The notes under the pieces: generated by a model | The model's database searches: none | What the model saw: only the letters and a program-made list of their open reading frames with translations | What the model was told of the DNA's origin: nothing | From: Auanema rhodensis | Taxonomy: Eukaryota > Animalia > Nematoda | Reading direction: 5' to 3' | Length of the DNA: 64,000 bases | Assembly: GCA_964057225.1 (NCBI GenBank) | Contig: OZ059897.1 | Coordinates: 9,486,001-9,550,000, forward strand | Position numbers and translations under genes: made by a program | In this document: positions 413-64,000 of the stretch, piece after piece | How positions within the stretch are numbered: the stretch's first letter is position 1 | Layout: each line of letters opens with the position of its first letter

Positions 413-417
413 TTGAG

Positions 418-10893: not shown

Positions 10894-10978
10894 CTGATTT
10901 CACCTGCATAAAGATCCAGTAGAAAATTACCTTTTGCTCTGAACATCTAAATGATTCAATACAATATCAGAAATCACA

Positions 10979-23687: not shown

Positions 23688-23772
23688 CTGATTTCACCTG
23701 CATAAAGATCCAGTAGAAAATTACCTTTTGCTCTGAACATCTAAATGATTCAATACAATATTAGAAATCACA

Positions 23773-26700: not shown

Positions 26701-27077
26701 TAACGTTTATTTTGAAAATTTATTCCTAACCTCTTTCTGATCAGATAGATTTCTGTAGATGTAACATTGTTTCAGTTCTTAGAACTCTGTTTAAGTGTTT
26801 TCAAACTTTGTATAGATAACAAGAAAAATGAAATGATAGAGATAGAACACTTCTGAGATCTTGATCCAAGGTTTTTCTGACGGACTGATCCATTAGAACC
26901 AAATATTACAAGAATTATTCTGATTTCATCTGCATAAAGATCCAGTAGAAAATTACCTTTTGCTCTGAACATCTAAATGATTCAATAGAATATCAGAAAT
27001 CACAGCCCGGTTAGCTCAGTCGGTAGAGCACCAGACTCTTAATCTGGCTGTCGCGGGTTCGAGCCCCGCATCGGGCT
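23773..27077 (+). tRNA. tRNA-Lys-CTT: Block of 9 full-length tRNA-Lys(CTT) genes
   Basis: Same gene with a 404-bp period, between the two clusters of short units. Confidence 0.95.
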
Positions 27078-27408
27078 TTAAGTTTTACCTTTTATTTGAA
27101 ATTATAACGTTTATTTTGAAAATTTATTCCTCACCTCTTTCTGATCAGATAGAATTCTGTAGATGTAACATTGTTTCAGTTCTTAGAACTCTGTTTAAGT
27201 GTTTTCAAACTTTGTATAGATAACAAGAAAAATGAAATGATAGAGATAGAACACTTCTGAGATCTTGATCCAAGGTTTTTCTGACGGACTGATCCATTAG
27301 AACCAAATATTACAAGAATTATTCTGATTTCATCTGCATAAAGATCCAGTAGAAAATTACCTTTTGCTCTGAACATCTAAATGATTCAATAGAATATCAG
27401 AAATCACA

Positions 27409-27728
27409 GCCCGGTTAGCTCAGTCGGTAGAGCACCAGACTCTTAATCTGGCTGTCGCCTGATTTCACCTGCATAAAGATCCAGTAGAAAATTACCTTTT
27501 GCTCTGAACATCTAAATGATTCAATACAATATCAGAAATCACAGCCCGGTTAGCTCAGTCGGTAGAGCACCAGACTCTTAATCTGGCTGTCGCCTGATTT
27601 CACCTGCATAAAGATCCAGTAGAAAATTACCTTTTGCTCTGAACATCTAAATGATTCAATACAATATTAGAAATCACAGCCCGGTTAGCTCAGTCGGTAG
27701 AGCACCAGACTCTTAATCTGGCTGTCGC
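27409..27728 (+). pseudogene. Three tandem 135-bp units with truncated tRNA-Lys (starts 27409, 27544, 27679)
   Basis: Same junction as at 10893/10894. Confidence 0.95.
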
Positions 27729-27813
27729 CTGATTTCACCTGCATAAAGATCCAGTAGAAAATTACCTTTTGCTCTGAACATCTAAATGATTCAATACAAT
27801 ATCAGAAATCACA

Positions 27814-42800: not shown

Positions 42801-45800
42801 TCTGGCTGTCGCGGGTTCGAGCCCCGCATCGGGCTTTGAGTTTAACCTTTTATTTGAAATTATAACGTTTATTTTGAAAATTTATTCCTAACCTCTATCT
42901 GATCAGATAGAATTCTGTAGATGTAACATTGTTTCAGTTCTTAGAACTCTGTTTAAGTGTTTTCAAACTTTGTATAGATAACAAGAAAAATGAAATGATA
43001 GAGATAGAACACTTCTGAGATCTTGATCCAAGGTTTTTCTGACGGACTGATCCATTAGAACCAAAGATTACAAGAATTATTCTGATTTCATCTGCATAAA
43101 GATCCAGTAGAAAATTACCTTTTGCTCTGAACATCTAAATGATTCAATACAATATCAGAAATCACAGCCCGGTTAGCTCAGTCGGTAGAGCACCAGACTC
43201 TTAATCTGGCTGTCGCGGGTTCGAGCCCCGCATCGGGCTTTGAGTTTAACCTTTTATTTGAAATTATAACGTTTATTTTGAAAATTTATTCCTAACCTCT
43301 ATCTGATCAGATAGAATTCTGTAGATGTAACATTGTTTCAGTTCTTAGAACTCTGTTTAAGTGTTTTCAAACTTTGTATAGATAACAAGAAAAATGAAAT
43401 GATAGAGATAGAACACTTCTGAGATCTTGATCCAAGGTTTTTCTGACGGACTGATCCATTAGAACCAAAGATTACAAGAATTATTCTGATTTCATCTGCA
43501 TAAAGATCCAGTAGAAAATTACCTTTTGCTCTGAACATCTAAATGATTCAATAGAATATCAGAAATCACAGCCCGGTTAGCTCAGTCGGTAGAGCACCAG
43601 ACTCTTAATCTGGCTGTCGCGGGTTCGAGCCCCGCATCGGGCTTTAAGTTTTACCTTTTATTTGAAATTATAACGTTTATTTTGAAAATTTATTCCTAAC
43701 CTCTTTCTGATCAGATAGAATTCTGTAGTTGTAACATTGTTTCAGTTCTTAGAACTCTGTTTAAGTGTTTTCAAACTTTGTATAGATACCAAGAAAAATG
43801 AAATGATAGAGATAGAACACTTCTGAGATCTTGATCCAAGGTTTTTCTGACGGACTGATCCATTAGAACCAAATATTACAAGAATTATTCTGATTTCATC
43901 TGCATAAAGATCCAGTAGAAAATTACCTTTTGCTCTGAACATCTAAATGATTCAATAGAATATCAGAAATCACAGCCCGGTTAGCTCAGTCGGTAGAGCA
44001 CCAGACTCTTAATCTGGCTGTCGCGGGTTCGAGCCCCGCATCGGGCTTTGAGTTTTACCTTTTATTTGAAATTATAACGTTTATTTTGAAAATTTATTCC
44101 TAACCTCTTTCTGATCAGATAGAATTCTGTAGATGTAACATTGTTTCAGTTCTTAGAACTCTGTTTAAGTGTTTTCAAACTTTGTATAGATACCAAGAAA
44201 AATGAAATGATAGAGATAGAACACTTCTAAGATCTTGATCCAAGGTTTTTCTGACGGACTGATCCATTAGAACCAAAGATTACAAGAATTATTCTGATTT
44301 CACCTGCATAAAGATCCAGTAGAAAATTACCTTTTGCTCTGAACATCTAAATGATTCAATACAATATCAGAAATCACAGCCCGGTTAGCTCAGTCGGTAG
44401 AGCACCAGACTCTTAATCTGGCTGTCGCGGGTTCGAGCCCCGCATCGGGCTTTAAGTTTTACCTTTTATTTGAAATTATAACGTTTATTTTGAAAATTTA
44501 TTCCTAGCCTCTTTCTGATCAGATAGATTTCTGTAGATGTAACAATGTTTCAGTTCTTAGAACTCTGTTTAAGTGTTTTCAAACTTTGTATAGATAACAA
44601 GAAAAATGAAATGATAGAGATAGAACACTTCTGAGATCTTGATCCAAGGTTTTTCTGACGGACTGATCCATTAGAACCAAAGATTACAAGAATTATTCTG
44701 ATTTCATCTGCATAAAGATCCAGTAGAAAATTACCTTTTGCTCTGAACATCTAAATGATTCAATACAATATCAGAAATCACAGCCCGGTTAGCTCAGTCG
44801 GTAGAGCACCAGACTCTTAATCTGGCTGTCGCGGGTTCGAGCCCCGCATCGGGCTTTGAGTTTAACCTTTTATTTGAAATTATAACGTTTATTTTGAAAA
44901 TTTATTCCTAACCTCTATCTGATCAGATAGAATTCTGTAGATGTAACATTGTTTCAGTTCTTAGAACTCTGTTTAAGTGTTTTCAAACTTTGTATAGATA
45001 ACAAGAAAAATGAAATGATAGAGATAGAACACTTCTGAGATCTTGATCCAAGGTTTTTCTGACGGACTGATCCATTAGAACCAAAGATTACAAGAATTAT
45101 TCTGATTTCATCTGCATAAAGATCCAGTAGAAAATTACCTTTTGCTCTGAACATCTAAATAATTCAATAGAATATCAGAAATCACAGCCCGGTTAGCTCA
45201 GTCGGTAGAGCACCAGACTCTTAATCTGGCTGTCGCGGGTTCGAGCCCCGCATCGGGCTTTGAGTTTTACCTTTTATTTGAAATTATAACGTTTATTTTG
45301 AAAATTTATTCCTAACCTCTTTCTGATCAGATAGAATTCTGTAGATGTAACATTGTTTCAGTTCTTAGAACTCTGTTTAAGTGTTTTCAAACTTTGTATA
45401 GATACCAAGAAAAATGAAATGATAGAGATAGAACACTTCTAAGATCTTGATCCAAGGTTTTTCTGACGGACTGATCCATTAGAACCAAAGATTACAAGAA
45501 TTATTCTGATTTCATCTGCATAAAGATCCAGTAGAAAATTACCTTTTGCTCTGAACATCTAAATGATTCAATACAATATCAGAAATCACAGCCCGGTTAG
45601 CTCAGTCGGTAGAGCACCAGACTCTTAATCTGGCTGTCGCGGGTTCGAGCCCCGCATCGGGCTTTGAGTTTAACCTTTTATTTGAAATTATAACGTTTAT
45701 TTTGAAAATTTATTCCTAACCTCTATCTGATCAGATAGAATTCTGTAGATGTAACATTGTTTCAGTTCTTAGAACTCTGTTTAAGTGTTTTCAAACTTTG

Positions 45801-48800
45801 TATAGATAACAAGAAAAATGAAATGATAGAGATAGAACACTTCTGAGATCTTGATCCAAGGTTTTTCTGACGGACTGATCCATTAGAACCAAAGATTACA
45901 AGAATTATTCTGATTTCATCTGCATAAAGATCCAGTAGAAAATTACCTTTTGCTCTGAACATCTAAATGATTCAATACAATATCAGAAATCACAGCCCGG
46001 TTAGCTCAGTCGGTAGAGCACCAGACTCTTAATCTGGCTGTCGCGGGTTCGAGCCCCGCATCGGGCTTTGAGTTTAACCTTTTATTTGAAATTATAACGT
46101 TTATTTTGAAAATTTATTCCTAACCTCTATCTGATCAGATAGAATTCTGTAGATGTAACATTGTTTCAGTTCTTAGAACTCTGTTTAAGTGTTTTCAAAC
46201 TTTGTATAGATAACAAGAAAAATGAAATGATAGAGATAGAACACTTCTAAGATCTTGATCCAAGGTTTTTCTGACGGACTGATCCATTAGAACCAAAGAT
46301 TACAAGAATTATTCTGATTTCATCTGCATAAAGATCCAGTAGAAAATTACCTTTTGCTCTGAACATCTAAATGATTCAATACAATATCAGAAATCACAGC
46401 CCGGTTAGCTCAGTCGGTAGAGCACCAGACTCTTAATCTGGCTGTCGCGGGTTCGAGCCCCGCATCGGGCTTTGAGTTTAACCTTTTATTTGAAATTATA
46501 ACGTTTATTTTGAAAATTTATTCCTAACCTCTATCTGATCAGATAGAATTCTGTAGATGTAACATTGTTTCAGTTCTTAGAACTCTGTTTAAGTGTTTTC
46601 AAACTTTGTATAGATAACAAGAAAAATGAAATGATAGAGATAGAACACTTCTGAGATCTTGATCCAAGGTTTTTCTGACGGACTGATCCATTAGAACCAA
46701 AGATTACAAGAATTATTCTGATTTCATCTGCATAAAGATCCAGTAGAAAATTACCTTTTGCTCTGAACATCTAAATGATTCAATACAATATCAGAAATCA
46801 CAGCCCGGTTAGCTCAGTCGGTAGAGCACCAGACTCTTAATCTGGCTGTCGCGGGTTCGAGCCCCGCATCGGGCTTTGAGTTTAACCTTTTATTTGAAAT
46901 TATAACGTTTATTTTGAAAATTTATTCCTAACCTCTATCTGATCAGATAGAATTCTGTAGATGTAACATTGTTTCAGTTCTTAGAACTCTGTTTAAGTGT
47001 TTTCAAACTTTGTATAGATAACAAGAAAAATGAAATGATAGAGATAGAACACTTCTGAGATCTTGATCCAAGGTTTTTCTGACGGACTGATCCATTAGAA
47101 CCAAAGATTACAAGAATTATTCTGATTTCATCTGCATAAAGATCCAGTAGAAAATTACCTTTTGCTCTGAACATCTAAATGATTCAATAGAATATCAGAA
47201 ATCACAGCCCGGTTAGCTCAGTCGGTAGAGCACCAGACTCTTAATCTGGCTGTCGCGGGTTCGAGCCCCGCATCGGGCTTTAAGTTTTACCTTTTATTTG
47301 AAATTATAACGTTTATTTTGAAAATTTATTCCTAACCTCTTTCTGATCAGATAGAATTCTGTAGTTGTAACATTGTTTCAGTTCTTAGAACTCTGTTTAA
47401 GTGTTTTCAAACTTTGTATAGATACCAAGAAAAATGAAATGATAGAGATAGAACACTTCTGAGATCTTGATCCAAGGTTTTTCTGACGGACTGATCCATT
47501 AGAACCAAATATTACAAGAATTATTCTGATTTCATCTGCATAAAGATCCAGTAGAAAATTACCTTTTGCTCTGAACATCTAAATGATTCAATAGAATATC
47601 AGAAATCACAGCCCGGTTAGCTCAGTCGGTAGAGCACCAGACTCTTAATCTGGCTGTCGCGGGTTCGAGCCCCGCATCGGGCTTTGAGTTTTACCTTTTA
47701 TTTGAAATTATAACGTTTATTTTGAAAATTTATTCCTAACCTCTTTCTGATCAGATAGAATTCTGTAGATGTAACATTGTTTCAGTTCTTAGAACTCTGT
47801 TTAAGTGTTTTCAAACTTTGTATAGATACCAAGAAAAATGAAATGATAGAGATAGAACACTTCTAAGATCTTGATCCAAGGTTTTTCTGACGGACTGATC
47901 CATTAGAACCAAAGATTACAAGAATTATTCTGATTTCACCTGCATAAAGATCCAGTAGAAAATTACCTTTTGCTCTGAACATCTAAATGATTCAATACAA
48001 TATCAGAAATCACAGCCCGGTTAGCTCAGTCGGTAGAGCACCAGACTCTTAATCTGGCTGTCGCGGGTTCGAGCCCCGCATCGGGCTTTAAGTTTTACCT
48101 TTTATTTGAAATTATAACGTTTATTTTGAAAATTTATTCCTAGCCTCTTTCTGATCAGATAGATTTCTGTAGATGTAACAATGTTTCAGTTCTTAGAACT
48201 CTGTTTAAGTGTTTTCAAACTTTGTATAGATAACAAGAAAAATGAAATGATAGAGATAGAACACTTCTGAGATCTTGATCCAAGGTTTTTCTGACGGACT
48301 GATCCATTAGAACCAAAGATTACAAGAATTATTCTGATTTCATCTGCATAAAGATCCAGTAGAAAATTACCTTTTGCTCTGAACATCTAAATGATTCAAT
48401 ACAAAATCAGAAATCACAGCCCGGTTAGCTCAGTCGGTAGAGCACCAGACTCTTAATCTGGCTGTCGCGGGTTCGAGCCCCGCATCGGGCTTTGAGTTTA
48501 ACCTTTTATTTGAAATTATAACGTTTATTTTGAAAATTTATTCCTAACCTCTATCTGATCAGATAGAATTCTGTAGTTGTAACATTGTTTCAGTTCTTAG
48601 AACTCTGTTTAAGTGTTTTCAAACTTTGTATAGATAACAAGAAAAATGAAATGATAGAGATAGAACACTTCTGAGATCTTGATCCAAGGTTTTTCTGACG
48701 GACTGATCCATTAGAACCAAATATTACAAGAATTATTCTGATTTCATCTGCATAAAGATCCAGTAGAAAATTACCTTTTGCTCTGAACATCTAAATGATT

Positions 48801-49703
48801 CAATAGAATATCAGAAATCACAGCCCGGTTAGCTCAGTCGGTAGAGCACCAGACTCTTAATCTGGCTGTCGCGGGTTCGAGCCCCGCATCGGGCTTTGAG
48901 TTTAACCTTTTATTTGAAATTATAACGTTTATTTTGAAAATTTATTCCTAGCCTCTTTCTGATCAGATAGATTTCTGTAGATGTAACATTGTTTCAGTTC
49001 TTAGAACTCTGTTTAAGTGTTTTCAAACTTTGTATAGATAACAAGAAAAATGAAATGATAGAGATAGAACACTTCTGAGATCTTGATCCAAGGTTTTTCT
49101 GACGGACTGATCCATTAGAACCAAAGATTACAAGAATTATTCTGATTTCATCTGCATAAAGATCCAGTAGAAAATTACCTTTTGCTCTGAACATCTAAAT
49201 GATTCAATACAAAATCAGAAATCACAGCCCGGTTAGCTCAGTCGGTAGAGCACCAGACTCTTAATCTGGCTGTCGCGGGTTCGAGCCCCGCATCGGGCTT
49301 TGAGTTTAACCTTTTATTTGAAATTATAACGTTTATTTTGAAAATTTATTCCTAGCCTCTTTCTGATCAGATAGATTTCTGTAGATGTAACATTGTTTCA
49401 GTTCTTAGAACTCTGTTTAAGTGTTTTCAAACTTTGTATAGATAACAAGAAAAATGAAATGATAGAGATAGAACACTTCTGAGATCTTGATCCAAGGTTT
49501 TTCTGACGGACTGATCCATTAGAACCAAAGATTACAAGAATTATTCTGATTTCATCTGCATAAAGATCCAGTAGAAAATTACCTTTTGCTCTGAACATCT
49601 AAATGATTCAATAGAATATCAGAAATCACAGCCCGGTTAGCTCAGTCGGTAGAGCACCAGACTCTTAATCTGGCTGTCGCGGGTTCGAGCCCCGCATCGG
49701 GCT
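27814..49703 (+). tRNA. tRNA-Lys-CTT: Block of 55 full-length tRNA-Lys(CTT) genes
   Basis: 404-bp period, with a +2 spacer indel near 36655 and a -1 spacer indel near 40451. Confidence 0.95.
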
Positions 49704-50034
49704 TTAAGTTTTACCTTTTATTTGAAATTATAACGTTTATTTTGAAAATTTATTCCTAACCTCTTTCTGATCAGATAGAATTCTGTAGATGTAACATTGT
49801 TTCAGTTCTTAGAACTCTGTTTAAGTGTTTTCAAACTTTTTATAGATAACAAGAAAAATGAAATGATAGAGATAGAACACTTCTGAGATCTTGATCCAAG
49901 GTTTTTCTGACGGACTGATCCATTAGAACCAAAGATTACAAGAATTATTCTGATTTCATCTGCATAAAGATCCAGTAGAAAATTACCTTTTGCTCTGAAC
50001 ATCTAAATGATTCAATAGAATATCAGAAATCACA

Positions 50035-50494
50035 GCCCGGTTAGCTCAGTCGGTAGAGTGTCACATCTGCAAGCACATGGTAAACATGTGCGCGCTATTC
50101 AAATAGCGGGAGCCTGAACAAGCCCCGCCCACAACATGGGACACACATGGCACTCTTGCTTCTGGCCTAACCCAGATAGGTTGTCTTATAGCCATGTGAG
50201 TCTCATCTCTATATCATCTATATATATATACTCTATTTAATACTTTATTAGATCTCTTTATATTCTTTCTTAATGTAATTCTTATATTGTATTTTCTTGT
50301 TATCTGATAATGAATCTTTTTCTCTTTAAGTATTTGTCTTAATAAGGAAATCGGGGCGTTCGGGTCTGCCTACCTAAGGAACAAGGTAGAAGTACATATA
50401 TCTTCCGACCATGAAAAGACGGGAAGAAACAATATGTAACGAGAGCACCAGACTCTTAATCTGGCTGTCGCGGGTTCGAGCCCCGCATCGGGCT
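50035..50494 (+). pseudogene. tRNA-Lys(CTT) split by a solo LTR after nt 24
   Basis: nt 1-24 at 50035-50058 and nt 21-73 at 50442-50494. Confidence 0.93.
50059..50441 (+). mobile_element. Solo LTR (383 bp) inserted in the tRNA D-arm, 4-bp TSD AGAG
   Basis: GGT-AGAG|TGTCACAT...ATGTAACG|AGAG-CACC. Matches the LTRs of the 2.7-kb elements. The array phase shifts by 387 bp, which equals 383+4. Confidence 0.95.
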
Positions 50495-52845
50495 TTGAGT
50501 TTTACCTTTTATTTGAAATTATAACGTTTATTTTGAAAATTTATTCCTAACCTCTTTCTGATCAGATAGAATTCTGTAGATGTAACATTGTTTCAGTTCT
50601 TAGAACTCTGTTTAAGTGTTTTCAAACTTTGTATAGATAACAAGAAAAATGAAATGATAGAGATAGAACACTTCTAAGATCTTGATCCAAGGTTTTTCTG
50701 ACGGACTGATCCATTAGAACCAAAGATTACAAGAATTATTCTGATTTCACCTGCATAAAGATCCAGTAGAAAATTACCTTTTGCTCTGAACATCTAAATG
50801 ATTCAATACAATATCAGAAATCACAGCCCGGTTAGCTCAGTCGGTAGAGCACCAGACTCTTAATCTGGCTGTCGCGGGTTCGAGCCCCGCATCGGGCTTT
50901 GAGTTTTACCTTTTATTTGAAATTATAACGTTTATTTTGAAAATTTATTCCTAACCTCTTTCTGATCAGATAGAATTCTGTAGATGTAACATTGTTTCAG
51001 TTCTTAGAACTCTGTTTAAGTGTTTTCAAACTTTGTATAGATACCAAGAAAAATGAAATGATAGAGATAGAACACTTCTGAGATCTTGATCCAAGGTTTT
51101 TCTGACGGACTGATCCATTAGAACCAAATATTACAAGAATTATTCTGATTTCATCTGCATAAAGATCCAGTAGAAAATTACCTTTTGCTCTGAACATCTA
51201 AATGATTCAATAGAATATCAGAAATCACAGCCCGGTTAGCTCAGTCGGTAGAGCACCAGACTCTTAATCTGGCTGTCGCGGGTTCGAGCCCCGCATCGGG
51301 CTTTGAGTTTTACCTTTTATTTGAAATTATAACGTTTATTTTGAAAATTTATTCCTAACCTCTTTCTGATCAGATAGAATTCTGTAGATGTAACATTGTT
51401 TCAGTTCTTAGAACTCTGTTTAAGTGTTTTCAAACTTTGTATAGATACCAAGAAAAATGAAATGATAGAGATAGAACACTTCTAAGATCTTGATCCAAGG
51501 TTTTTCTGACGGACTGATCCATTAGAACCAAAGATTACAAGAATTATTCTGATTTCACCTGCATAAAGATCCAGTAGAAAATTACCTTTTGCTCTGAACA
51601 TCTAAATGATTCAATACAATATCAGAAATCACAGCCCGGTTAGCTCAGTCGGTAGAGCACCAGACTCTTAATCTGGCTGTCGCGGGTTCGAGCCCCGCAT
51701 CCGGCTTTAAGTTTTACCTTTTATTTGAAATTATAACGTTTATTTTGAAAATTTATTCCTAGCCTCTTTCTGATCAGATAGATTTCTGTAGATGTAACAA
51801 TGTTTCAGTTCTTAGAACTCTGTTTAAGTGTTTTCAAACTTTGTATAGATAACAAGAAAAATGAAATGATAGAGATAGAACACTTCTGAGATCTTGATCC
51901 AAGGTTTTTCTGACGGACTGATCCATTAGAACCAAAGATTACAAGAATTATTCTGATTTCATCTGCATAAAGATCCAGTAGAAAATTACCTTTTGCTCTG
52001 AACATCTAAATGATTCAATACAAAATCAGAAATCACAGCCCGGTTAGCTCAGTCGGTAGAGCACCAGACTCTTAATCTGGCTGTCGCGGGTTCGAGCCCC
52101 GCATCGGGCTTTGAGTTTAACCTTTTATTTGAAATTATAACGTTTATTTTGAAAATTTATTCCTAACCTCTATCTGATCAGATAGAATTCTGTAGATGTA
52201 ACATTGTTTCAGTTCTTAGAACTCTGTTTAAGTGTTTTCAAACTTTGTATAGATAACAAGAAAAATGAAATGATAGAGATAGAACACTTCTGAGATCTTG
52301 ATCCAAGGTTTTTCTGACGGACTGATCCATTAGAACCAAAGATTACAAGAATTATTCTGATTTCATCTGCATAAAGATCCAGTAGAAAATTACCTTTTGC
52401 TCTGAACATCTAAATGATTCAATAGAATATCAGAAATCACAGCCCGGTTAGCTCAGTCGGTAGAGCACCAGACTCTTAATCTGGCTGTCGCGGGTTCGAG
52501 CCCCGCATCGGGCTTTAAGTTTTACCTTTTATTTGAAATTATAACGTTTATTTTGAAAATTTATTCCTAACCTCTTTCTGATCAGATAGAATTCTGTAGA
52601 TGTAACATTGTTTCAGTTCTTAGAACTCTGTTTAAGTGTTTTCAAACTTTTTATAGATAACAAGAAAAATGAAATGATAGAGATAGAACACTTCTGAGAT
52701 CTTGATCCAAGGTTTTTCTGACGGACTGATCCATTAGAACCAAAGATTACAAGAATTATTCTGATTTCATCTGCATAAAGATCCAGTAGAAAATTACCTT
52801 TTGCTCTGAACATCTAAATGATTCAATAGAATATCAGAAATCACA

Positions 52846-53305
52846 GCCCGGTTAGCTCAGTCGGTAGAGTGTCACATCTGCAAGCACATGGTAAACATGT
52901 GCGCGCTATTCAAATAGCGGGAGCCTGAACAAGCCCCGCCCACAACATGGGACACACATGGCACTCTTGCTTCTGGCCTAACCCAGATAGGTTGTCTTAT
53001 AGCCATGTGAGTCTCATCTCTATATCATCTATATATATATACTCTATTTAATACTTTATTAGATCTCTTTATATTCTTTCTTAATGTAATTCTTATATTG
53101 TATTTTCTTGTTATCTGATAATGAATCTTTTTCTCTTTAAGTATTTGTCTTAATAAGGAAATCGGGGCGTTCGGGTCTGCCTACCTAAGGAACAAGGTAG
53201 AAGTACATATATCTTCCGACCATGAAAAGACGGGAAGAAACAATATGTAACGAGAGCACCAGACTCTTAATCTGGCTGTCGCGGGTTCGAGCCCCGCATC
53301 GGGCT
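52846..53305 (+). pseudogene. tRNA-Lys(CTT) split by a solo LTR
   Basis: Same structure as 50035-50494. Confidence 0.93.
52870..53252 (+). mobile_element. Second solo LTR (383 bp), same D-arm site, TSD AGAG
   Basis: Same sequence and junctions as 50059-50441, located 2811 bp downstream. Confidence 0.95.
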
Positions 53306-54797
53306 TTGAGTTTTACCTTTTATTTGAAATTATAACGTTTATTTTGAAAATTTATTCCTAACCTCTTTCTGATCAGATAGAATTCTGTAGATGTAACATT
53401 GTTTCAGTTCTTAGAACTCTGTTTAAGTGTTTTCAAACTTTGTATAGATAACAAGAAAAATGAAATGATAGAGATAGAACACTTCTAAGATCTTGATCCA
53501 AGGTTTTTCTGACGGACTGATCCATTAGAACCAAAGATTACAAGAATTATTCTGATTTCACCTGCATAAAGATCCAGTAGAAAATTACCTTTTGCTCTGA
53601 ACATCTAAATGATTCAATACAATATCAGAAATCACAGCCCGGTTAGCTCAGTCGGTAGAGCACCAGACTCTTAATCTGGCTGTCGCGGGTTCGAGCCCCG
53701 CATCGGGCTTTGAGTTTTACCTTTTATTTGAAATTATAACGTTTATTTTGAAAATTTATTCCTAACCTCTTTCTGATCAGATAGATTTCTGTAGATGTAA
53801 CATTGTTTCAGTTCTTAGAACTCTGTTTAAGTGTTTTCAAACTTTGTATAGATAACAAGAAAAATGAAATGATAGAGATAGAACACTTCTGAGATCTTGA
53901 TCCAAGGTTTTTCTGACGGACTGATCCATTAGAACCAAAGATTACAAGAATTATTCTGATTTCATCTGCATAAAGATCCAGTAGAAAATTACCTTTTGCT
54001 CTGAACATCTAAATGATTCAATACAATATCAGAAATCACAGCCCGGTTAGCTCAGTCGGTAGAGCACCAGACTCTTAATCTGGCTGTCGCGGGTTCGAGC
54101 CCCGCATCGGGCTTTGAGTTTAACCTTTTATTTGAAATTATAACGTTTATTTTGAAAATTTATTCCTAACCTCTATCTGATCAGATAGAATTCTGTAGAT
54201 GTAACATTGTTTCAGTTCTTAGAACTCTGTTTAAGTGTTTTCAAACTTTGTATAGATAACAAGAAAAATGAAATGATAGAGATAGAACACTTCTGAGATC
54301 TTGATCCAAGGTTTTTCTGACGGACTGATCCATTAGAACCAAAGATTACAAGAATTATTCTGATTTCATCTGCATAAAGATCCAGTAGAAAATTACCTTT
54401 TGCTCTGAACATCTTGTCACATCTGCAAGCACATGGTAAACATGTGCGCGCTATTCAAATAGCGGGAGCCTGAACAAGCCCCGCCCACAACATGGGACAC
54501 ACATGGCACTCTTGCTTCTGGCCTAACCCAGATAGGTTGTCTTATAGCCATGTGAGTCTCATCTCTATATCATCTATATATATATACTCTATTTAATACT
54601 TTATTAGATCTCTTTATATTCTTTCTTAATGTAATTCTTATATTGTATTTTCTTGTTATCTGATAATGAATCTTTTTCTCTTTAAGTATTTGTCTTAATA
54701 AGGAAATCGGGGCGTTCGGGTCTGCCTACCTAAGGAACAAGGTAGAAGTACATATATCTTCCGACCATGAAAAGACGGGAAGAAACAATATGTAACG

Positions 54798-54810
54798 TGG
54801 AGGTTCCACC
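54798..54810 (+). promoter_or_regulatory. Primer-binding site complementary to the 3' end of tRNA-Gln
   Basis: TGGAGGTTCCACC directly follows the 5' LTR. Its reverse complement GGTGGAACCT-CCA is the 3' end of metazoan tRNA-Gln (GGTTCCA...GGTGGAACCT), identified from recall. Confidence 0.85.
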
Positions 54811-55918
54811 TTGCTTACTTTACTGTTAATTTATTGACAGCAAGTTTACGAGACTTTTGGACTTAATTACCCAACAGTGAGGAGTAACCGAGCCGTGCAC
54901 CATGATTTCCCCAAAAATTATTTTGGCTACCACTTCTCCTCCGCTCAACGAAAACTGGGAGGTGTCTGAGACGTTTGGGGAAACTATCAGACAATAGTTT
55001 TGACGAGCGTTACCTTTTTGTTATGCACGCGCGTGCTATTTTGATTCATTACTTTATGATGTGAATGTCCAGTGTGGCAACAGAGCTCACTTTTTAGCTG
55101 AGTTGTTTGGAAGCTGGAGGCTGTTGGGATAATTTTATTTACGATTTTTTGATTTTGATTCACATCCAAGGGTTCATCAGGGTTCTACTCCTGTTAACTC
55201 TTTTCTTATTAGTTCAGAGATAATAAGAATATTTAAATTCCTACCCACCCAAGTCCACTCTACGTCTGCCAACGTTTCCTTTTTCCTATATTATTGACAG
55301 ATTACTGAATTTAAATTCCTATATCAATCTTAAATTACCTTCTAAATCTTTTGAAATTAAATTAAAAATTATCTTAATTAAGATTTATTTTGAAATTCTT
55401 TCTACAAATCTTAATAAACTTTATAAAATTGAACTTAATATACGAGATGAGACATTTTTGTTTACTTTAAGCTTACTCACATTCAAATAGTTGGCCCACG
55501 CGTACCAGCTGTTCGACATGTGTAGTCAATAACAGCTGTTAAAATTCAAAAGTTTTCAAACAGGCTTAAGGCACCATCTGTGATTCCTAATTTGTCTCTA
55601 AGCTGACATTAGTGATTATAATATTCAAATATCACGACAGACGGTCAATGGTGGTTTACCATAAGCGCTAACATCTGGTGTCGTGACACATGGCTGGAGG
55701 CGGAGCTTGAAGCTTCAACGATCCTCCTTCATCAGACGCCATTGTCACAAACGTTTTTACTGGAGTCTAGTTGCTTCCAGTACGCGCTCTTATATTCATC
55801 TAACTGTATTCACCAGCCACCATGTCGGACTCGGACATCAGCGAGGACAACAAAGATTAGGAACAAGGATCACCAGAGCCATACCTTTTGTATGTCACAC
55901 AACAACAAAGAAGAATGA

Positions 55919-56126
55919 ACAACGGTTAATGACTTAGTTATGATAAAAGTGAATTCTACACGAAAACAAACTAACACCTTCATTCGAAAGGCCTTATTTA
56001 GTTACAGCAGTTCAAAGATCTTTCGTCGTGGTTCAAACAGATAAAGGAAAAAGCAGAAGAGTACACAAGGACTTCGTCAAACCTTACCAACGGACAACAT
56101 CTATTCCGGTTATCACAATTTCTTGA
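55919..56126 (+). pseudogene. Decayed Ty3/gypsy integrase C-terminal (GPY/F) remnant
   Basis: Manual translation gives TTVNDLVMIKVNSTRK / frameshift / NKLTPSFERPYLVTAVQRSFVVVQTDKGKSRRVHKDFVKPYQRTTSIPVITIS*. This fits the VGDxV...KLxPxFxGPYxV...VHxxxxKPY pattern. Confidence 0.75.
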
Positions 56127-56718
56127 AGGTAGTTTTTTTTTTAACAAAATCAAATTGTTGAAATTTTTCTTATTTTATTTTGTGCCATTTCTAATTGTAA
56201 CACTTCTTTGTTGTTGATTGATTTTCTCTGAGAAGTCTGCTATTGTTTTACAAGGTTTTGTTTTATTACTCCAACTCTCATTGAGTAGATTTTTTTTTCA
56301 ACATTCTCTTGTGAATCATGCTATTTTTTATGCTTAATCATTACTTGTATTCACCTTATGGACATTAGTCATACGGGTTAAACGAGTTTTCATTTTTTTG
56401 TACAAAACGAGCTCGACCTATTCTCAGGGTAACACCGTACCTGTACAACTCAAGAAAATGAACGACTATATCACAGTCGAATGGTTTAGAAGCAAAGCTC
56501 TCGTTTGCAAGCATTTCACTACTCAAGTGAATGAAATAGAATCTACTCGATACTACATTTCGAATTCAACAAACTTGAAGAGACAATAGCTAAACTTTCA
56601 AATCGTATTGTATACATTTTTTTTTATCCACTACACCATGATTTTTTTTTCCAACATCCAACTATCTTAAAAAGTGAATTAATTTATTTTGTTTTTGAAC
56701 GAGGACGTTCAACTTTTT

Positions 56719-56730
56719 AAGGTGGGGGGA
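56719..56730 (+). promoter_or_regulatory. Polypurine tract
   Basis: AAGGTGGGGGGA lies immediately before the TG of the 3' LTR. Confidence 0.88.
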
Positions 56731-57113
56731 TGTCACATCTGCAAGCACATGGTAAACATGTGCACGCTATTCAAATAGCGGGAGCCTGAACAAGCCCCGC
56801 CCACAACATGGGACACACATGGCACTCTTGCTTCTGGCCTAACCCAGATAGGTTGTCTTATAGCCATGTGAGTCTCATCTCTATATCATCTATATATATA
56901 TACTCTATTTAATACTTTATTAGATCTCTTTATATTCTTTCTTAATGTAATTCTTATATTGTATTTTCTTGTTATCTGATAATGAATCTTTTTCTCTTTA
57001 AGTATTTGTCTTAATAAGGAAATCGGGGCGTTCGGGTCTGCCTACCTAAGGAACAAGGTAGAAGTACATATATCTTCCGACCATGAAAAGACGGGAAGAA
57101 ACAATATGTAACG

Positions 57114-57166
57114 AGAGCACCAGACTCTTAATCTGGCTGTCGCGGGTTCGAGCCCCGCATCGGGCT
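57114..57166 (+). pseudogene. 5'-deleted tRNA-Lys (nt 21-73) abutting the 3' LTR
   Basis: AGAGCACCAGAC...ATCGGGCT, with no nt 1-20 on the other side of the element. Confidence 0.93.
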
Positions 57167-59466
57167 TTGAGTTTTACCTTTTATTTGAAATTATAACGTT
57201 TATTTTGAAAATTTATTCCTAACCTCTTTCTGATCAGATAGAATTCTGTAGATGTAACATTGTTTCAGTTCTTAGAACTCTGTTTAAGTGTTTTCAAACT
57301 TTGTATAGATAACAAGAAAAATGAAATGATAGAGATAGAACACTTCTAAGATCTTGATCCAAGGTTTTTCTGACGGACTGATCCATTAGAACCAAAGATT
57401 ACAAGAATTATTCTGATTTCACCTGCATAAAGATCCAGTAGAAAATTACCTTTTGCTCTGAACATCTAAATGATTCAATACAATATCAGAAATCACAGCC
57501 CGGTTAGCTCAGTCGGTAGAGCACCAGACTCTTAATCTGGCTGTCGCGGGTTCGAGCCCCGCATCGGGCTTTGAGTTTTACCTTTTATTTGAAATTATAA
57601 CGTTTATTTTGAAAATTTATTCCTAACCTCTTTCTGATCAGATAGATTTCTGTAGATGTAACATTGTTTCAGTTCTTAGAACTCTGTTTAAGTGTTTTCA
57701 AACTTTGTATAGATAACAAGAAAAATGAAATGATAGAGATAGAACACTTCTGAGATCTTGATCCAAGGTTTTTCTGACGGACTGATCCATTAGAACCAAA
57801 GATTACAAGAATTATTCTGATTTCATCTGCATAAAGATCCAGTAGAAAATTACCTTTTGCTCTGAACATCTAAATGATTCAATAGAATATCAGAAATCAC
57901 AGCCCGGTTAGCTCAGTCGGTAGAGCACCAGACTCTTAATCTGGCTGTCGCGGGTTCGAGCCCCGCATCGGGCTTTAAGTTTTACCTTTTATTTGAAATT
58001 ATAACGTTTATTTTGAAAATTTATTCCTAACCTCTTTCTGATCAGATAGAATTCTGTAGATGTAACATTGTTTCAGTTCTTAGAACTCTGTTTAAGTGTT
58101 TTCAAACTTTGTATAGATAACAAGAAAAATGAAATGATAGAGATAGAACACTTCTGAGATCTTGATCCAAGGTTTTTCTGACGGACTGATCCATTAGAAC
58201 CAAAGATTACAAGAATTATTCTGATTTCATCTGCATAAAGATCCAGTAGAAAATTACCTTTTGCTCTGAACATCTAAATGATTCAATACAATATCAGAAA
58301 TCACAGCCCGGTTAGCTCAGTCGGTAGAGCACCAGACTCTTAATCTGGCTGTCGCGGGTTTGAGCCCCGCATCGGGCTTTGAGTTTTACCTTTTATTTGA
58401 AATTATAACGTTTATTTTGAAAATTTATTCCTAACCTCTATCTGATCAGATAGAATTCTGTAGATGTAACATTGTTTCAGTTCTTACAACTCTGTTTAAG
58501 TGTTTTCAAACTTTGTATAGATAACAAGAAAAATGAAATGATAGAGATAGAACACTTCTGAGATCTTGATCCAAGGTTTTTCTGACGGACTGATCCATTA
58601 GAACCAAAGATTACAAGAATTATTCTGATTTCATCTGCATAAAGATCCAGTAGAAAATTACCTTTTGCTCTGAACATCTAAATGATTCAATAGAATATCA
58701 GAAATCACAGCCCGGTTAGCTCAGTCGGTAGAGCACCAGACTCTTAATCTGGCTGTCGCGGGTTCGAGCCCCGCATCGGGCTTTAAGTTTTACCTTTTAT
58801 TTGAAATTATAACGTTTATTTTGAAAATTTATTCCTAACCTCTTTCTGATCAGATAGAATTCTGTAGATGTAACATTGTTTCAGTTCTTAGAACTCTGTT
58901 TAAGTGTTTTCAAACTTTGTATAGATAACAAGAAAAATGAAATGATAGAGATAGAACACTTCTGAGATCTTGATCCAAGGTTTTTCTGACGGACTGATCC
59001 ATTAGAACCAAAGATTACAAGAATTATTCTGATTTCATCTGCATAAAGATCCAGTAGAAAATTACCTTTTGCTCTGAACATCTTGTCACATCTGCAAGCA
59101 CATGGTAAACATGTGCGCGCTATTCAAATAGCGGGAGCCTGAACAAGCCCCGCCCACAACATGGGACACACATGGCACTCTTGCTTCTGGCCTAACCCAG
59201 ATAGGTTGTCTTATAGCCATGTGAGTCTCATCTCTATATCATCTATATATATATACTCTATTTAATACTTTATTAGATCTCTTTATATTCTTTCTTAATG
59301 TAATTCTTATATTGTATTTTCTTGTTATCTGATAATGAATCTTTTTCTCTTTAAGTATTTGTCTTAATAAGGAAATCGGGGCGTTCGGGTCTGCCTACCT
59401 AAGGAACAAGGTAGAAGTACATATATCTTCCGACCATGAAAAGACGGGAAGAAACAATATGTAACG

Positions 59467-59479
59467 TGGAGGTTCCACC
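59467..59479 (+). promoter_or_regulatory. Primer-binding site (tRNA-Gln), copy 2
   Basis: TGGAGGTTCCACC after the 5' LTR. Confidence 0.85.
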
Positions 59480-60587
59480 TTGCTTACTTTACTGTTAATT
59501 TATTGACAGCAAGTTTACGAGACTTTTGGACTTAATTACCCAACAGTGAGGAGTAACCGAGCCGTGCACCATGATTTCCCCAAAAATTATTTTGGCTACC
59601 ACTTCTCCTCCGCTCAACGAAAACTGGGAGGTGTCTGAGACGTTTGGGGAAACTATCAGACAATAGTTTTGACGAGCGTTACCTTTTTGTTATGCACGCG
59701 CGTGCTATTTTGATTCATTACTTTATGATGTGAATGTCCAGTGTGGCAACAGAGCTCACTTTTTAGCTGAGTTGTTTGGAAGCTGGAGGCTGTTGGGATA
59801 ATTTTATTTACGATTTTTTGATTTTGATTCACATCCAAGGGTTCATCAGGGTTCTACTCCTGTTAACTCTTTTCTTATTAGTTCAGAGATAATAAGAATA
59901 TTTAAATTCCTACCCACCCAAGTCCACTCTACGTCTGCCAACGTTTCCTTTTTCCTATATTATTGACAGATTACTGAATTTAAATTCCTATATCAATCTT
60001 AAATTACCTTCTAAATCTTTTGAAATTAAATTAAAAATTATCTTAATTAAGATTTATTTTGAAATTCTTTCTACAAATCTTAATAAACTTTATAAAATTG
60101 AACTTAATATACGAGATGAGACATTTTTGTTTACTTTAAGCTTACTCACATTCAAATAGTTGGCCCACGCGTACCAGCTGTTCGACATGTGTAGTCAATA
60201 ACAGCTGTTAAAATTCAAAAGTTTTCAAACAGGCTTAAGGCACCATCTGTGATTCCTAATTTGTCTCTAAGCTGACATTAGTGATTATAATATTCAAATA
60301 TCACGACAGACGGTCAATGGTTGTTTACCATAAGCGCTAACATCTGGTGTCGTGACACATGGCTGGAGGCGGAGCTTGAAGCTTCAACGATCCTCCTTCA
60401 TCAGACGCCATTGTCACAAACGTTTTTACTGGAGTCTAGTTGCTTCCAGTACGCGCTCTTATATTCATCTAACTGTATTCACCAGCCACCATGTCGGACT
60501 CGGACATCAGCGAGGACAACAAAGATTAGGAACAAGGATCACCAGAGCCATACCTTTTGTATGTCACACAACAACAAAGAAGAATGA

Positions 60588-60795
60588 ACAACGGTTAATG
60601 ACTTAGTTATGATAAAAGTGAATTCTACACGAAAACAAACTAACACCTTCATTCGAAAGGCCTTATTTAGTTACAGCAGTTCAAAGATCTTTCGTCGTGG
60701 TTCAAACAGATAAAGGAAAAAGCAGAAGAGTACACAAGGACTTCGTCAAACCTTACCAACGGACAACATCTATTCCGGTTATCACAATTTCTTGA
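60588..60795 (+). pseudogene. Integrase GPY/F remnant, copy 2
   Basis: Same sequence as 55919-56126, offset by 4669 bp. Confidence 0.75.
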
Positions 60796-61388
60796 AGGTA
60801 GTTTTTTTTTTAACAAAATCAAATTGTTGAAATTTTTCTTATTTTATTTTGTGCCATTTCTAATTGTAACACTTCTTTGTTGTTGATTGATTTTCTCTGA
60901 GAAGTCTGCTATTGTTTTACAAGGTTTTGTTTTATTACTCCAACTCTCATTGAGTAGATTTTTTTTTCAACATTCTCTTGTGAATCATGCTATTTTTTAT
61001 GCTTAATCATTACTTGTATTCACCTTATGGACATTAGTCATACGGGTTAAACGAGTTTTCATTTTTTTGTACAAAACGAGCTCGACCTATTCTCAGGGTA
61101 ACACCGTACCTGTACAACTCAAGAAAATGAACGACTATATCACAGTCGAATGGTTTAGAAGCAAAGCTCTCGTTTGCAAGCATTTCACTACTCAAGTGAA
61201 TGAAATAGAATCTACTCGATACTACATTTCGAATTCAACAAACTTGAAGAGACAATAGCTAAACTTTCAAATCGTATTGTATACATTTTTTTTTTATCCA
61301 CTACACCATGATTTTTTTTTCCAACATCCAACTATCTTGAAAAGTGAATTAATTTATTTTGTTTTTGAACGAGGACGTTCAACTTTTT

Positions 61389-61400
61389 AAGGTGGGGGGA
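61389..61400 (+). promoter_or_regulatory. Polypurine tract, copy 2
   Basis: AAGGTGGGGGGA before the 3' LTR. Confidence 0.88.
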
Positions 61401-64000
61401 TGTCACATCTGCAAGCACATGGTAAACATGTGCGCGCAATTCAAATAGCGGGAGCCTGAACAAGCCCCGCCCACAACATGGGACACACATGGCACTCTTG
61501 CTTCTGGCCTAACCCAGATAGGTTGTCTTATAGCCATGTGAGTCTCATCTCTATATCATCTATATATATATACTCTATTTAATACTTTATTAGATCTCTT
61601 TATATTCTTTCTTAATGTAATTCTTATATTGTATTTTCTTGTTATCTGATAATGAATCTTTTTCTCTTTAAGTATTTGTCTTAATAAGGAAATCGGGGCG
61701 TTCGGGTCTGCCTACCTAAGGAACAAGGTAGAAGTACATATATCTTCCGACCATGAAAAGACGGGAAGAAACAATATGTAACGATCTAAATGATTCAATA
61801 GAATATCAGAAATCACAGCCCGGTTAGCTCAGTCGGTAGAGCACCAGACTCTTAATCTGGCTGTCGCGGGTTCGAGCCCCGCATCGGGCTTTGAGTTTTA
61901 CCTTTTATTTGAAATTATAACGTTTATTTTGAAAATTTATTCCTAACCTCTTTCTGATCAGATAGAATTCTGTAGATGTAACATTGTTTCAGTTCTTAGA
62001 ACTCTGTTTAAGTGTTTTCAAACTTTGTATAGATAACAAGAAAAATGAAATGATAGAGATAGAACACTTCTAAGATCTTGATCCAAGGTTTTTCTGACGG
62101 ACTGATCCATTAGAACCAAAGATTACAAGAATTATTCTGATTTCACCTGCATAAAGATCCAGTAGAAAATTACCTTTTGCTCTGAACATCTAAATGATTC
62201 AATACAATATCAGAAATCACAGCCCGGTTAGCTCAGTCGGTAGAGCACCAGACTCTTAATCTGGCTGTCGCGGGTTCGAGCCCCGCATCGGGCTTTGAGT
62301 TTTACCTTTTATTTGAAATTATAACGTTTATTTTGAAAATTTATTCCTAACCTCTTTCTGATCAGATAGATTTCTGTAGATGTAACATTGTTTCAGTTCT
62401 TAGAACTCTGTTTAAGTGTTTTCAAACTTTTGTATAGATAACAAGAAAAATGAAATGATAGAGATAGAACACTTCTGAGATCTTGATCCAAGGTTTTTCT
62501 GACGGACTGATCCATTAGAACCAAAGATTACAAGAATTATTCTGATTTCATCTGCATAAAGATCCAGTAGAAAATTACCTTTTGCTCTGAACATCTAAAT
62601 GATTCAATAGAATATCAGAAATCACAGCCCGGTTAGCTCAGTCGGTAGAGCACCAGACTCTTAATCTGGCTGTCGCGGGTTCGAGCCCCGCATCGGGCTT
62701 TGAGTTTTACCTTTTATTTGAAATTATAACGTTTATTTTGAAAATTTATTCCTAACCTCTTTCTGATCAGATAGATTTCTGTAGATGTAACATTGTTTCA
62801 GTTCTTAGAACTCTGTTTAAGTGTTTTCAAACTTTGTATAGATAACAAGAAAAATGAAATGATAGAGATAGAACACTTCTGAGATCTTGATCCAAGGTTT
62901 TTCTGACGGACTGATCCATTAGAACCAAAGATTACAAGAATTATTCTGATTTCATCTGCATAAAGATCCAGTAGAAAATTACCTTTTGCTCTGAACATCT
63001 AAATGATTCAATAGAATATCAGAAATCACAGCCCGGTTAGCTCAGTCGGTAGAGCACCAGACTCTTAATCTGGCTGTCGCGGGTTCGAGCCCCGCATCGG
63101 GCTTTGAGTTTTACCTTTTATTTGAAATTATAACGTTTATTTTGAAAATTTATTCCTAACCTCTTTCTGATCAGATAGAATTCTGTAGATGTAACATTGT
63201 TCCAGTTCTGAGAACTCTGTTTAAGTGTTTTCAAACTTTGTATAGATAACAAGAAAAATGAAATGATAGAGATAGAACACTTCTAAGATCTTGATCCAAG
63301 GTTTTTCTGACGGACTGATCCATTAGAACCAAAGATTACAAGAATTATTCTGATTTCACCTGCATAAAGATCCAGTAGAAAATTACCTTTTGCTCTGAAC
63401 ATCTAAATGATTCAATACAATATCAGAAATCACAGCCCGGTTAGCTCAGTCGGTAGAGCACCAGACTCTTAATCTGGCTGTCGCGGGTTCGAGCCCCGCA
63501 TCGGGCTTTAAGTTTTACCTTTTATTTGAAATTATAACGTTTATTTTGAAAATTTATTCCTAACCTCTTTCTGATCAGATAGAATTCTGTAGATGTAACA
63601 TTGTTTCAGTTCTTAGAACTCTGTTTAAGTGTTTTCAAACTTTGTATAGATAACAAGAAAAATGAAATGATAGAGATAGAACACTTCTGAGATCTTGATC
63701 CAAGGTTTTTCTGACGGACTGATCCATTTGAACCAAAGATTACAAGAATTATTCTGATTTCATCTGCATAAAGATCCAGTAGAAAATTACCTTTTGCTCT
63801 GAACATCTAAATGATTCAATACAATATCAGAAATCACAGCCCGGTTAGCTCAGTCGGTAGAGCACCAGACTCTTAATCTGGCTGTCGCGGGTTCGAGCCC
63901 CGCATCGGGCTTTAAGTTTTACCTTTTATTTGAAATTATAACGTTTATTTTGAAAATTTATTCCTAACCTCTTTCTGATCAGATAGATTTCTGTAGATGT

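What the first reader, a model, noticed from the sequence alone, without database searches (positions are those of the whole stretch)
50059..61787. Candidate tRNA-gene-targeting Ty3/gypsy element: two independent integration sites about 50 bp apart at the Pol III start region
Seen: one LTR family has two different TSD-defined sites in the 404-bp unit. ATCT ends 30 bp upstream of tRNA nt 1 and AGAG is tRNA nt 21-24, next to the A box. All copies share the tRNA orientation. Known: yeast Ty3 and Dictyostelium DGLT-A integrate just upstream of tRNA genes via Pol III factors. I do not know of a well-described animal LTR family that does this. Inference: integrase tethering to TFIIIB/TFIIIC, with the array as a safe-harbour niche. 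Two sites are a very small sample, so chance is not excluded.
Basis: partly seen in the sequence, partly recalled or inferred. Interest (0 to 1): 0.85.

Follow-up and report, generated by a model that had tools for sequence, protein, structure and literature searches.

The report
tRNA-array-seeking retrovirus-like element in a nematode
A young, still intact retrovirus-like mobile element, probably in a nematode genome, lands about a hundred times more often in tandem arrays of tRNA genes than elsewhere, a habit so far described only in yeasts and social amoebae.

Summary
The window is a 404-bp tRNA-Lys(CTT) array. It holds two solo 383-bp LTRs at AGAG (tRNA nt 21-24) and two 2.7-kb elements: one has ATCT duplications 30 bp upstream of the tRNA, and one is an ATCT/AGAG recombinant. 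That makes two integration events, later copied and recombined within the array.

I examined 52 non-redundant insertions genome-wide. Thirty-six lie within 500 bp of tRNA genes, in arrays of at least 16 tRNA species, and one lies in a 5S rDNA array. tRNA arrays make up roughly 2-5% of the genome (p about 1e-34). A 351-bp satellite fills about 24% of the assembly but took only 3 insertions, which argues against plain tandem-repeat, heterochromatin or safe-haven retention.

Within arrays the sites are broad (about -290 to +39) and not Ty3-precise. The tRNA 3' half plus 75 bp downstream is avoided (1 observed, 11 expected). Orientation is biased 26:10 towards that of the tRNA.

The autonomous partner is about 10.1 kb, with PR-RT-RNaseH-IN order, a tRNA-Gln primer site and no chromodomain. 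Its nearest relatives are nematode gypsy-type elements with a gB-like envelope.

Tethering to Pol III factors is inferred and was not tested. Reviews list no animal example. Other first-reader notes from this scan flag the same theme elsewhere in this genome.

The parts
50059..50441 (+). Solo LTR (383 bp) inside a tRNA-Lys(CTT) gene. The AGAG duplication is at 50055-50058 and 50442-50445, which is tRNA nt 21-24.
52870..53252 (+). Second solo LTR at the identical AGAG site, 2811 bp (387 + 6x404) from the first. It is probably a copy made by unequal exchange in the array.
54415..57113 (+). Non-autonomous element A (2699 bp): 5' LTR 54415-54797, internal part 54798-56730, 3' LTR 56731-57113. The left flank is the ATCT site and the right flank is the AGAG site, so this is an LTR-LTR recombinant that lacks the 50 bp between the two sites.
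   Evidence: array phase arithmetic
59084..61783 (+). Non-autonomous element B (2700 bp): 5' LTR 59084-59466, PBS 59467-59479, PPT 61389-61400, 3' LTR 61401-61783. The ATCT duplication is at 59080-59083 and 61784-61787, with 30 nt between ATCT and tRNA nt 1. B is a deletion derivative of the 10.1-kb element: the first 1464 bp, a 45-bp pol fragment and the last 1191 bp.
59467..59479 (+). Primer binding site TGGAGGTTCCACC. It is complementary to the 3' end (+CCA) of the host tRNA-Gln genes.
   Evidence: ten genomic matches with anticodon CTG/TTG and 3' end GGTGGAACCT
1..64000 (+). Host target: a 404-bp tandem array of tRNA-Lys(CTT) genes, 138 called intact, with units 98-99% alike.

Best explanation
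The window holds copies of a young LTR retroelement family of the Ty3/gypsy type. The autonomous form is about 10.1 kb and carries one long frame of about 2,584 aa, read as gag, then a gB-like envelope region, then PR-RT-RNaseH-IN. It has 383-bp LTRs and is primed by tRNA-Gln. The window copies are 2.7-kb internal-deletion derivatives and solo LTRs.

The family's integration machinery places new copies preferentially into tandem arrays of RNA polymerase III genes: many tRNA species and 5S rDNA. It makes 4-bp duplications. Sites fall in a broad zone from a few hundred bp upstream to about nt 39 of the tRNA. The element usually points the same way as the tRNA, and it avoids the tRNA 3' half and the 75 bp downstream.

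In the window there were two such integrations (AGAG and ATCT). Unequal exchange and LTR-LTR recombination within the array then produced the four copies seen.

Shown here: the anatomy, the genome-wide preference, the youth of the copies and the satellite control. Inferred: the preference is set at integration by contact with something bound at active Pol III genes (TFIIIB, TFIIIC, a Pol III subunit, or the chromatin they organise). I consider a Ty1-like broad-window tether more likely than a Ty3-like point tether.
For: - Anatomy.
- Copy number: about 148 5' ends and 143 3' ends of the LTR in the 181-Mb assembly.
- Preference: of 52 non-redundant insertions examined, 36 have a tRNA gene within 500 bp. 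These lie in arrays of Lys-CTT, Lys-TTT, Ile-AAT, Ile-TAT, Pro-TGG, Pro-AGG, Ser-GCT, Ser-AGA, Thr-AGT, Arg-TCG, Arg-ACG, His-GTG, Gly-GCC, Glu-TTC, Ala-TGC and Tyr/Leu, on six chromosomes. One more lies 99 bp upstream of a 5S gene in a 399-bp 5S array.
- Expected share: a B-box count gives about 12,000 tRNA genes, so arrays make up roughly 2-5% of the genome. The binomial p is 7e-35 even at 5%.
- Internal control: a 351-bp satellite has about 122,000 copies, about 43 Mb or 24% of the assembly. It received only 3 of the 52 insertions.
- Youth: most elements have 0-2 differences between their own two LTRs. The zero-difference elements show the same share at Pol III genes, about 12 of 17. At least nine copies keep the full-length frame.
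- Non-uniform placement in arrays: 1 insertion against 11 expected in tRNA nt 40-end plus 75 bp downstream (p=4e-5). Orientation is 26 same to 10 opposite (p=0.011).
- Hot spot: three insertions within 5 bp at about -115 of tRNA-His, in both orientations.
- Pol domains. Integrase is related to Ty3 and PFV integrases.
Against: - No protein contact was tested.
- Integration sites are not at a fixed distance from the tRNA start. The enrichment in -1..-50 is weak (9 against 5.1).
- 12 of 52 insertions are in other sequence: two are nested in other gypsy elements and the others are in unclassified repeats or unique DNA.
- The integrase has no recognisable extra targeting domain.
- Three relatives in other nematodes have no tRNA gene in the flanks available.
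- The genomic share of tRNA arrays is an estimate from a motif count and not from a full annotation.
Confidence: 0.78

Rival explanations
1. Retention bias. The element integrates anywhere, but insertions survive only where they are harmless, and redundant tRNA arrays are such safe places.
For: Arrays of hundreds of identical genes tolerate loss of single units. Four insertions disrupt tRNA genes without visible consequence. Copies are amplified within arrays by unequal exchange.
Against: The 351-bp satellite is about ten times larger than all tRNA arrays together and should be at least as harmless. Yet it holds 3 insertions against 36. Elements with identical LTR pairs, the youngest, are as enriched as the rest. 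The genome is not compact at 181 Mb.
Confidence: 0.1
2. Chromatin or repeat targeting without Pol III factors. The element is drawn to a chromatin state shared by tandem arrays or repeat-rich chromosome regions, for example heterochromatin as in chromoviruses or Ty5.
For: 40 of 52 insertions are in tandem repeats of some kind (tRNA, 5S, satellite). Copies cluster in certain megabase regions.
Against: The main satellite is under-hit (3 of 52 against 24% of the genome, p=0.0015). No chromodomain was found in the integrase. Placement and orientation are patterned relative to the tRNA gene itself.
Confidence: 0.1
3. Target-sequence preference. The integrase favours a short DNA motif that happens to be common in tRNA array units.
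For: There is a weak consensus around the duplication: no T at its first base, and A at the second base after it in 24 of 32 sites. There is a 5-bp hot spot in the His array. ACATC is shared by the Lys-CTT ATCT site and the His hot spot.
Against: The consensus is far too weak to give a 100-fold preference. The arrays hit have unrelated spacers and at least 16 different tRNA species. AT-rich sequence matching the weak consensus is abundant everywhere, including in the satellite.
Confidence: 0.03

Closest known systems
Ty3 of Saccharomyces cerevisiae (also Tj1 of Schizosaccharomyces japonicus and Tyl/Ylt elements of Yarrowia)
   Same: It is a Ty3/gypsy-type element with PR-RT-RNaseH-IN order. 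The integrase matches the Ty3 integrase in the solved intasome (7q5b, E=6e-24). It inserts at tRNA genes and also at 5S genes.
   Different: Ty3 and Tj1 insert within 1-10 bp of the Pol III start site (Table 1 of PMC5911963). Here sites spread over about 330 bp and include the gene's 5' half. The host is an animal, the targets are huge tandem arrays, and the element carries a gB-like envelope region. The closest pol relatives are nematode elements and not fungal ones.
Ty1/Ty2/Ty4 of S. cerevisiae
   Same: It uses a broad window upstream of Pol III genes instead of a point, and it includes 5S genes (PMC5911963). No dedicated folded targeting domain is visible.
   Different: Ty1 is a copia-type element (IN before RT). 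Its tether is integrase to the AC40/Rpc40 subunit, and it does not insert inside tRNA genes. Nucleosome periodicity could not be tested here.
DGLT-A and Skipper-2 of Dictyostelium
   Same: These are gypsy-type elements next to tRNA genes. DGLT-A has one frame for gag and pol and inserts in either orientation.
   Different: DGLT-A inserts 13-33 bp upstream and Skipper-2 inserts 8-23 bp downstream. Here the zone just downstream is avoided and the upstream window is much wider. The amoeba genomes are compact, and this genome is not.
Nematode gypsy-type elements with a gB-like (class III fusion) envelope region, e.g. Diploscapter pachys WR25_20102 and Caenorhabditis japonica A0A8R1I018
   Same: They are the best pol matches (41-53% identity). 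They have the same layout with the fusion-protein region ahead of PR in one frame and a similar size, with LTRs about 9.7 kb apart.
   Different: The three relatives whose flanks I could read have no tRNA gene nearby. The array preference may therefore be specific to this lineage, though three is a small sample.

Membership tests
Ty3/gypsy (Metaviridae-type) LTR retroelement | Direct LTRs, short target duplication, PBS next to the 5' LTR and polypurine tract next to the 3' LTR | tested here: met
   383-bp LTRs, 4-bp duplications in 30+ copies, PBS TGGAGGTTCCACC, PPT AAGGTGGGGGGA
Ty3/gypsy (Metaviridae-type) LTR retroelement | pol domain order protease, reverse transcriptase, RNase H, integrase | tested here: met
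   Pfam on the 1251-aa frame: PR 80-170, RT 416-575, RNase H 638-768, IN 887-1057
Ty3/gypsy (Metaviridae-type) LTR retroelement | RT/IN placed inside Metaviridae in a tree with reference clades | not tested
   No reference set was at hand. Only best-hit evidence exists: nematode gypsy-type proteins and the Ty3 and PFV integrases.
Ty3-like point targeting of Pol III start sites | Insertions within a few bp of the Pol III transcription start | tested here: not met
   Sites range from about -290 to +39. Only two lie at -5..-8.
Pol III-gene-targeting retrotransposons (functional class) | Strong excess of insertions next to tRNA genes over the genomic expectation | tested here: met
   36 of 52 against at most 5% expected, p=7e-35. 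The satellite control took 3 of 52 against 24% of the genome.
Pol III-gene-targeting retrotransposons (functional class) | Other Pol III genes (5S) also hit | tested here: met
   One full-length copy sits in a 399-bp 5S rDNA array, 99 bp upstream of a 5S gene. This is a single case.
Pol III-gene-targeting retrotransposons (functional class) | Dependence on TFIIIB, TFIIIC or Pol III bound at the target | not testable with these tools
   This needs binding or genetic experiments.
Chromoviruses (heterochromatin-targeting gypsy elements) | Chromodomain at the integrase C-terminus | tested here: not met
   There is no chromodomain hit. The protein ends about 35 aa after the GPY/F motif.
Nematode gB-like-envelope gypsy lineage | Class III fusion glycoprotein region ahead of PR in the polyprotein | tested here: inconclusive
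   tblastn links a degraded 8.1-kb copy to the fusion-protein regions of P0001 and P0003. Pfam on the pieces gave nothing. No intact full-length copy could be fetched.

The most novel reading that the evidence does not exclude
This would be an envelope-bearing endogenous retrovirus of a nematode that evolved Pol III-gene targeting independently of the yeast and amoeba elements, using a tether different from Ty3's TFIIIB contact. The host's exceptional tRNA arrays (about 12,000 or more genes) would then serve as, or have grown as, a landing zone that absorbs a whole guild of tRNA-Gln-primed elements.
Probability: 0.3. Interest if true: 0.85.

Novelty: new variant of a known kind. Interest (0 to 1): 0.74.

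Why it matters
Targeting of Pol III genes is the textbook case of a mobile element choosing a harmless address. Every case listed in the reviews I read is from fungi or dictyostelid amoebae, and the habit is explained there as an adaptation to compact genomes.

A clear animal case changes that picture in three ways. It occurs in a 181-Mb genome that is a quarter satellite, so the habit is not tied to compactness. It adds another independent origin. It also offers an animal integrase with a natural preference for redundant gene arrays, which is of interest for safe-site gene insertion.

The case further links two oddities of this genome: its huge tRNA gene arrays and its active retroelements.

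Tried and rejected
- Chance co-occurrence of two sites in one array. Rejected by the genome-wide table.
- General tandem-repeat preference. Three insertions fell in a tRNA-free 351-bp repeat, so I considered it. I rejected it once the repeat proved to be about 24% of the genome.
- Other Pol III genes near the non-tRNA sites. Rfam at gathering and at E<=0.1 found only 5S. A tRNA-like BLAST of those flanks found nothing.
- Counting every copy as an event. Rejected, because identical flanks show array duplication. One 13-kb structure on C3 and the chimeric copies in the Glu array are rearrangements and not extra integrations.
- Wrapping positions by array period. This gave artefacts in irregular arrays, so I used direct distances.
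- Pfam on fragments of the 8.1-kb copy upstream of pol. No hits.
- The fourth batch of flanks and any intact full-length copy could not be fetched.
- Read laying used short contigs only. It could not confirm junctions.
- Relatives in other nematodes showed no tRNA neighbours. With n=3 this is uninformative about the ancestral state.
Full report
**What is in the window.**

ARAGORN finds 138 tRNA-Lys(CTT) genes, all on the + strand, spaced 404 bp apart. Tandem Repeats Finder reports the same 404-bp array at 98-99% identity. Between 50059 and 61783 the array is interrupted four times by one LTR family.
- The LTR is 383 bp and runs TGTCAC...GTAACG.
- Two solo LTRs (50059-50441 and 52870-53252) sit at the same place, flanked by AGAG, which is tRNA nt 21-24. 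They are 2811 bp apart (387 + 6x404). The second is therefore most simply a copy made by unequal exchange in the array.
- Element B (59084-61783, 2700 bp) has ATCT on both sides, with 30 nt between ATCT and tRNA nt 1.
- Element A (54415-57113, 2699 bp) has the ATCT flank on its left and the AGAG flank on its right. The array phase shows that exactly the 50 bp between the two sites is missing. A is therefore an LTR-LTR recombinant of an ATCT copy and an AGAG copy.
- Both elements carry the primer site TGGAGGTTCCACC after the 5' LTR and the polypurine tract AAGGTGGGGGGA before the 3' LTR.

It amounts to two integration events. A third site in the same array (CAAG, about -92) carries two copies just before the window start.

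**What the element is.**

The LTR has about 148 5' ends and 143 3' ends in the 181-Mb assembly. Many LTR pairs lie about 9.75 kb apart.
- A 7.2-kb copy carries a 1251-aa frame with protease, reverse transcriptase, RNase H and integrase in that order.
- In full-length copies this frame is part of a single open frame of about 2,584 aa. At least nine copies keep it.
- The window's 2.7-kb elements are plain deletion derivatives. They consist of the first 1464 bp, a 45-bp pol fragment and the last 1191 bp, and are 97.5-99.3% identical to the long form.
- The best pol matches are nematode proteins from Diploscapter, Heterorhabditis, Caenorhabditis and Auanema, at 41-53% identity. Those proteins carry a class III (herpesvirus gB-like) fusion-protein region ahead of the protease.
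- A degraded 8.1-kb copy here shows similarity to that region, although Pfam on its pieces was blank.
- The integrase matches the Ty3 and foamy-virus integrases. It ends with a GPY/F motif and has no chromodomain.
- The primer site is the complement of the 3' end plus CCA of the host tRNA-Gln genes. About ten dispersed copies with anticodon CTG or TTG were found.
- Most elements have 0-2 differences between their own LTRs, so the family is very young.
- One run guessed to be RNA holds contigs over the element but none over the far more abundant array. This hints at transcription but does not show it.

**Genome-wide placement.**

- I defined insertions by their flanks and duplications, rebuilt the empty sites and scanned them for tRNA genes.
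- I then merged copies with identical flanks and obvious rearrangement products. These were a 13-kb structure on C3 and inversion chimeras in the Glu array.
- This left 52 independent insertions. Thirty-six have a tRNA gene within 500 bp, in arrays of at least 16 tRNA species on six chromosomes.
- One full-length copy lies in a 399-bp 5S rDNA array, 99 bp upstream of a 5S gene and in the same orientation.
- A count of the B-box motif gives 12,041 matches against 233 for the reversed control. That means roughly 12,000-20,000 tRNA genes. With 250-400-bp units, this is about 2-5% of the genome.
- Even at 5%, 36 of 52 has p=7e-35.

**The control that separates the explanations.**

Three insertions lie in a 351-bp tandem repeat without any tRNA or Rfam match.
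- A 27-nt piece of that repeat occurs about 122,000 times. That is about 43 Mb, or about 24% of the assembly.
- The most abundant and presumably most harmless tandem repeat thus took 3 of 52 insertions, about 0.07 per Mb. The rest of the genome shows about the same density.
- tRNA arrays took about 36 in roughly 4-6 Mb.
- This argues against a general liking for tandem repeats or heterochromatin. It also argues against simple survival in harmless DNA.
- The youngest elements, those with identical LTR pairs, show the same share at Pol III genes (about 12 of 17). This again points to choice at integration.

**Placement within the arrays.**

The sites are not Ty3-like.
- Four insertions lie inside tRNA genes, all between nt 21 and 39.
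- Nine lie 1-50 bp upstream (5.1 expected, p=0.09), ten lie 51-135 bp upstream, and the rest lie further out.
- The tRNA 3' half plus the 75 bp downstream holds one insertion against 11 expected (p=4e-5).
- Orientation is 26 with the tRNA and 10 against it (p=0.011).
- In the His arrays, three independent insertions in both orientations start within 5 bp of each other at about -115.
- The sequence consensus at the duplication is weak.

The pattern is an array-level preference with a wide upstream-to-mid-gene zone and an avoided zone over the B-box side and terminator region.

**How it most likely works.**

Established here: integrase-type insertion with 4-bp duplications, the roughly 100-fold preference for Pol III gene arrays, the youth of the copies, and the patterned placement relative to the gene.

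Inferred: the preference arises from contact between the integration complex and something assembled on active Pol III genes. The avoided zone would then reflect occupancy by TFIIIC or a positioned nucleosome. The wide window resembles Ty1, which binds a Pol III subunit and inserts into upstream nucleosomes (PMC5911963). It resembles Ty3 less, since Ty3 contacts TFIIIB and inserts at the start site. No recognisable targeting domain is present, so a short motif, as in Ty1 integrase (PMC7459421, listed), would be my guess.

**Comparison with what is known.**

Table 1 of the 2018 review of Pol III-targeting retrotransposons lists only fungal and dictyostelid elements. The text of that review has no mention of animals or nematodes. 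A 2026 review again cites only yeast for this niche. My full-text searches found no animal case. Three nematode relatives with readable flanks have no tRNA gene nearby.

I therefore file this as a new variant of a known kind. It works like a Pol III-gene-targeting LTR element, but it is not a member of the Ty3 point-targeting group and is not a chromovirus.

**Limits.**
- About a third of the listed LTR copies were not examined.
- The genomic share of tRNA arrays is a motif-based estimate.
- No unrelated transposon family was tabulated as a second control.
- Junctions could not be checked in raw long reads.
- The organism's name is coded in the tools. The nematode assignment rests on protein best hits.
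- Other first-reader notes of this scan flag the same theme on other pieces of this genome. None had been followed up, and I did not count them as evidence.

Noticed in passing
window 10759-11028, 23418-23822, 27324-27863: Inside the 404-bp array, a 135-bp piece is locally repeated 2-4 times in tandem at three places. The piece covers the upstream spacer plus about the first 50 nt of the tRNA.
   Followed up: no
G000 genome-wide; examples C1:2811064-2845899, C3:3.96 Mb, C3:4.856 Mb, C4:19.03 Mb: A 351-bp tandem repeat without tRNA or Rfam match has about 122,000 copies, roughly 43 Mb or 24% of the assembly. Its units contain several short hairpins.
   Followed up: partly
G000 genome-wide: The B-box motif GGTTCGANNCC occurs 12,041 times against 233 for the control. 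This implies a very large tRNA gene complement, mostly in tandem arrays. tRNA-Gln, the element's primer, has only about ten dispersed copies.
   Followed up: partly
G000:C6:14664713-14691170 (L079-L082): In a tRNA-Glu array, copies in opposite orientation have swapped flanks. This is the pattern expected from inversions by recombination between inverted elements.
   Followed up: partly
G000:C5:10334763, 10679245, 10740679 (L060, L062, L025/L026): Three independent insertions, in both orientations, start within 5 bp of each other about 115 bp upstream of tRNA-His.
   Followed up: partly
L067 about 248-262 (G000:C5:11272695 region): A different element carries the same tRNA-Gln primer site next to a ...CG end. 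This fits a guild of related families sharing primer and LTR terminus.
   Followed up: no
L050 154-750 and the flank of G000:C1:17315525: Two insertions of this family are nested inside other gypsy-type elements.
   Followed up: no
window 59437-61658 in run X9 (organism D): A run labelled as another organism holds the element's internal part nearly identically (998 nt with 1 difference). It lacks the 404-bp array spacer, and its tRNA-Lys genes sit in other contexts. This could mean close kinship or transfer.
   Followed up: no
window 59343-61634 in runs X12-X14: Runs guessed to be RNA hold contigs over the element but none over the array, which hints that the 2.7-kb element is transcribed. A variant with 37 extra letters at 60593-60595 is seen in X12 and X9.
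   Followed up: no
G000:C8:26573717-26577346 and C4:5655359-5658988: A second family with 56% pol identity and long open frames exists in the genome. Its insertion sites could not be read.
   Followed up: no
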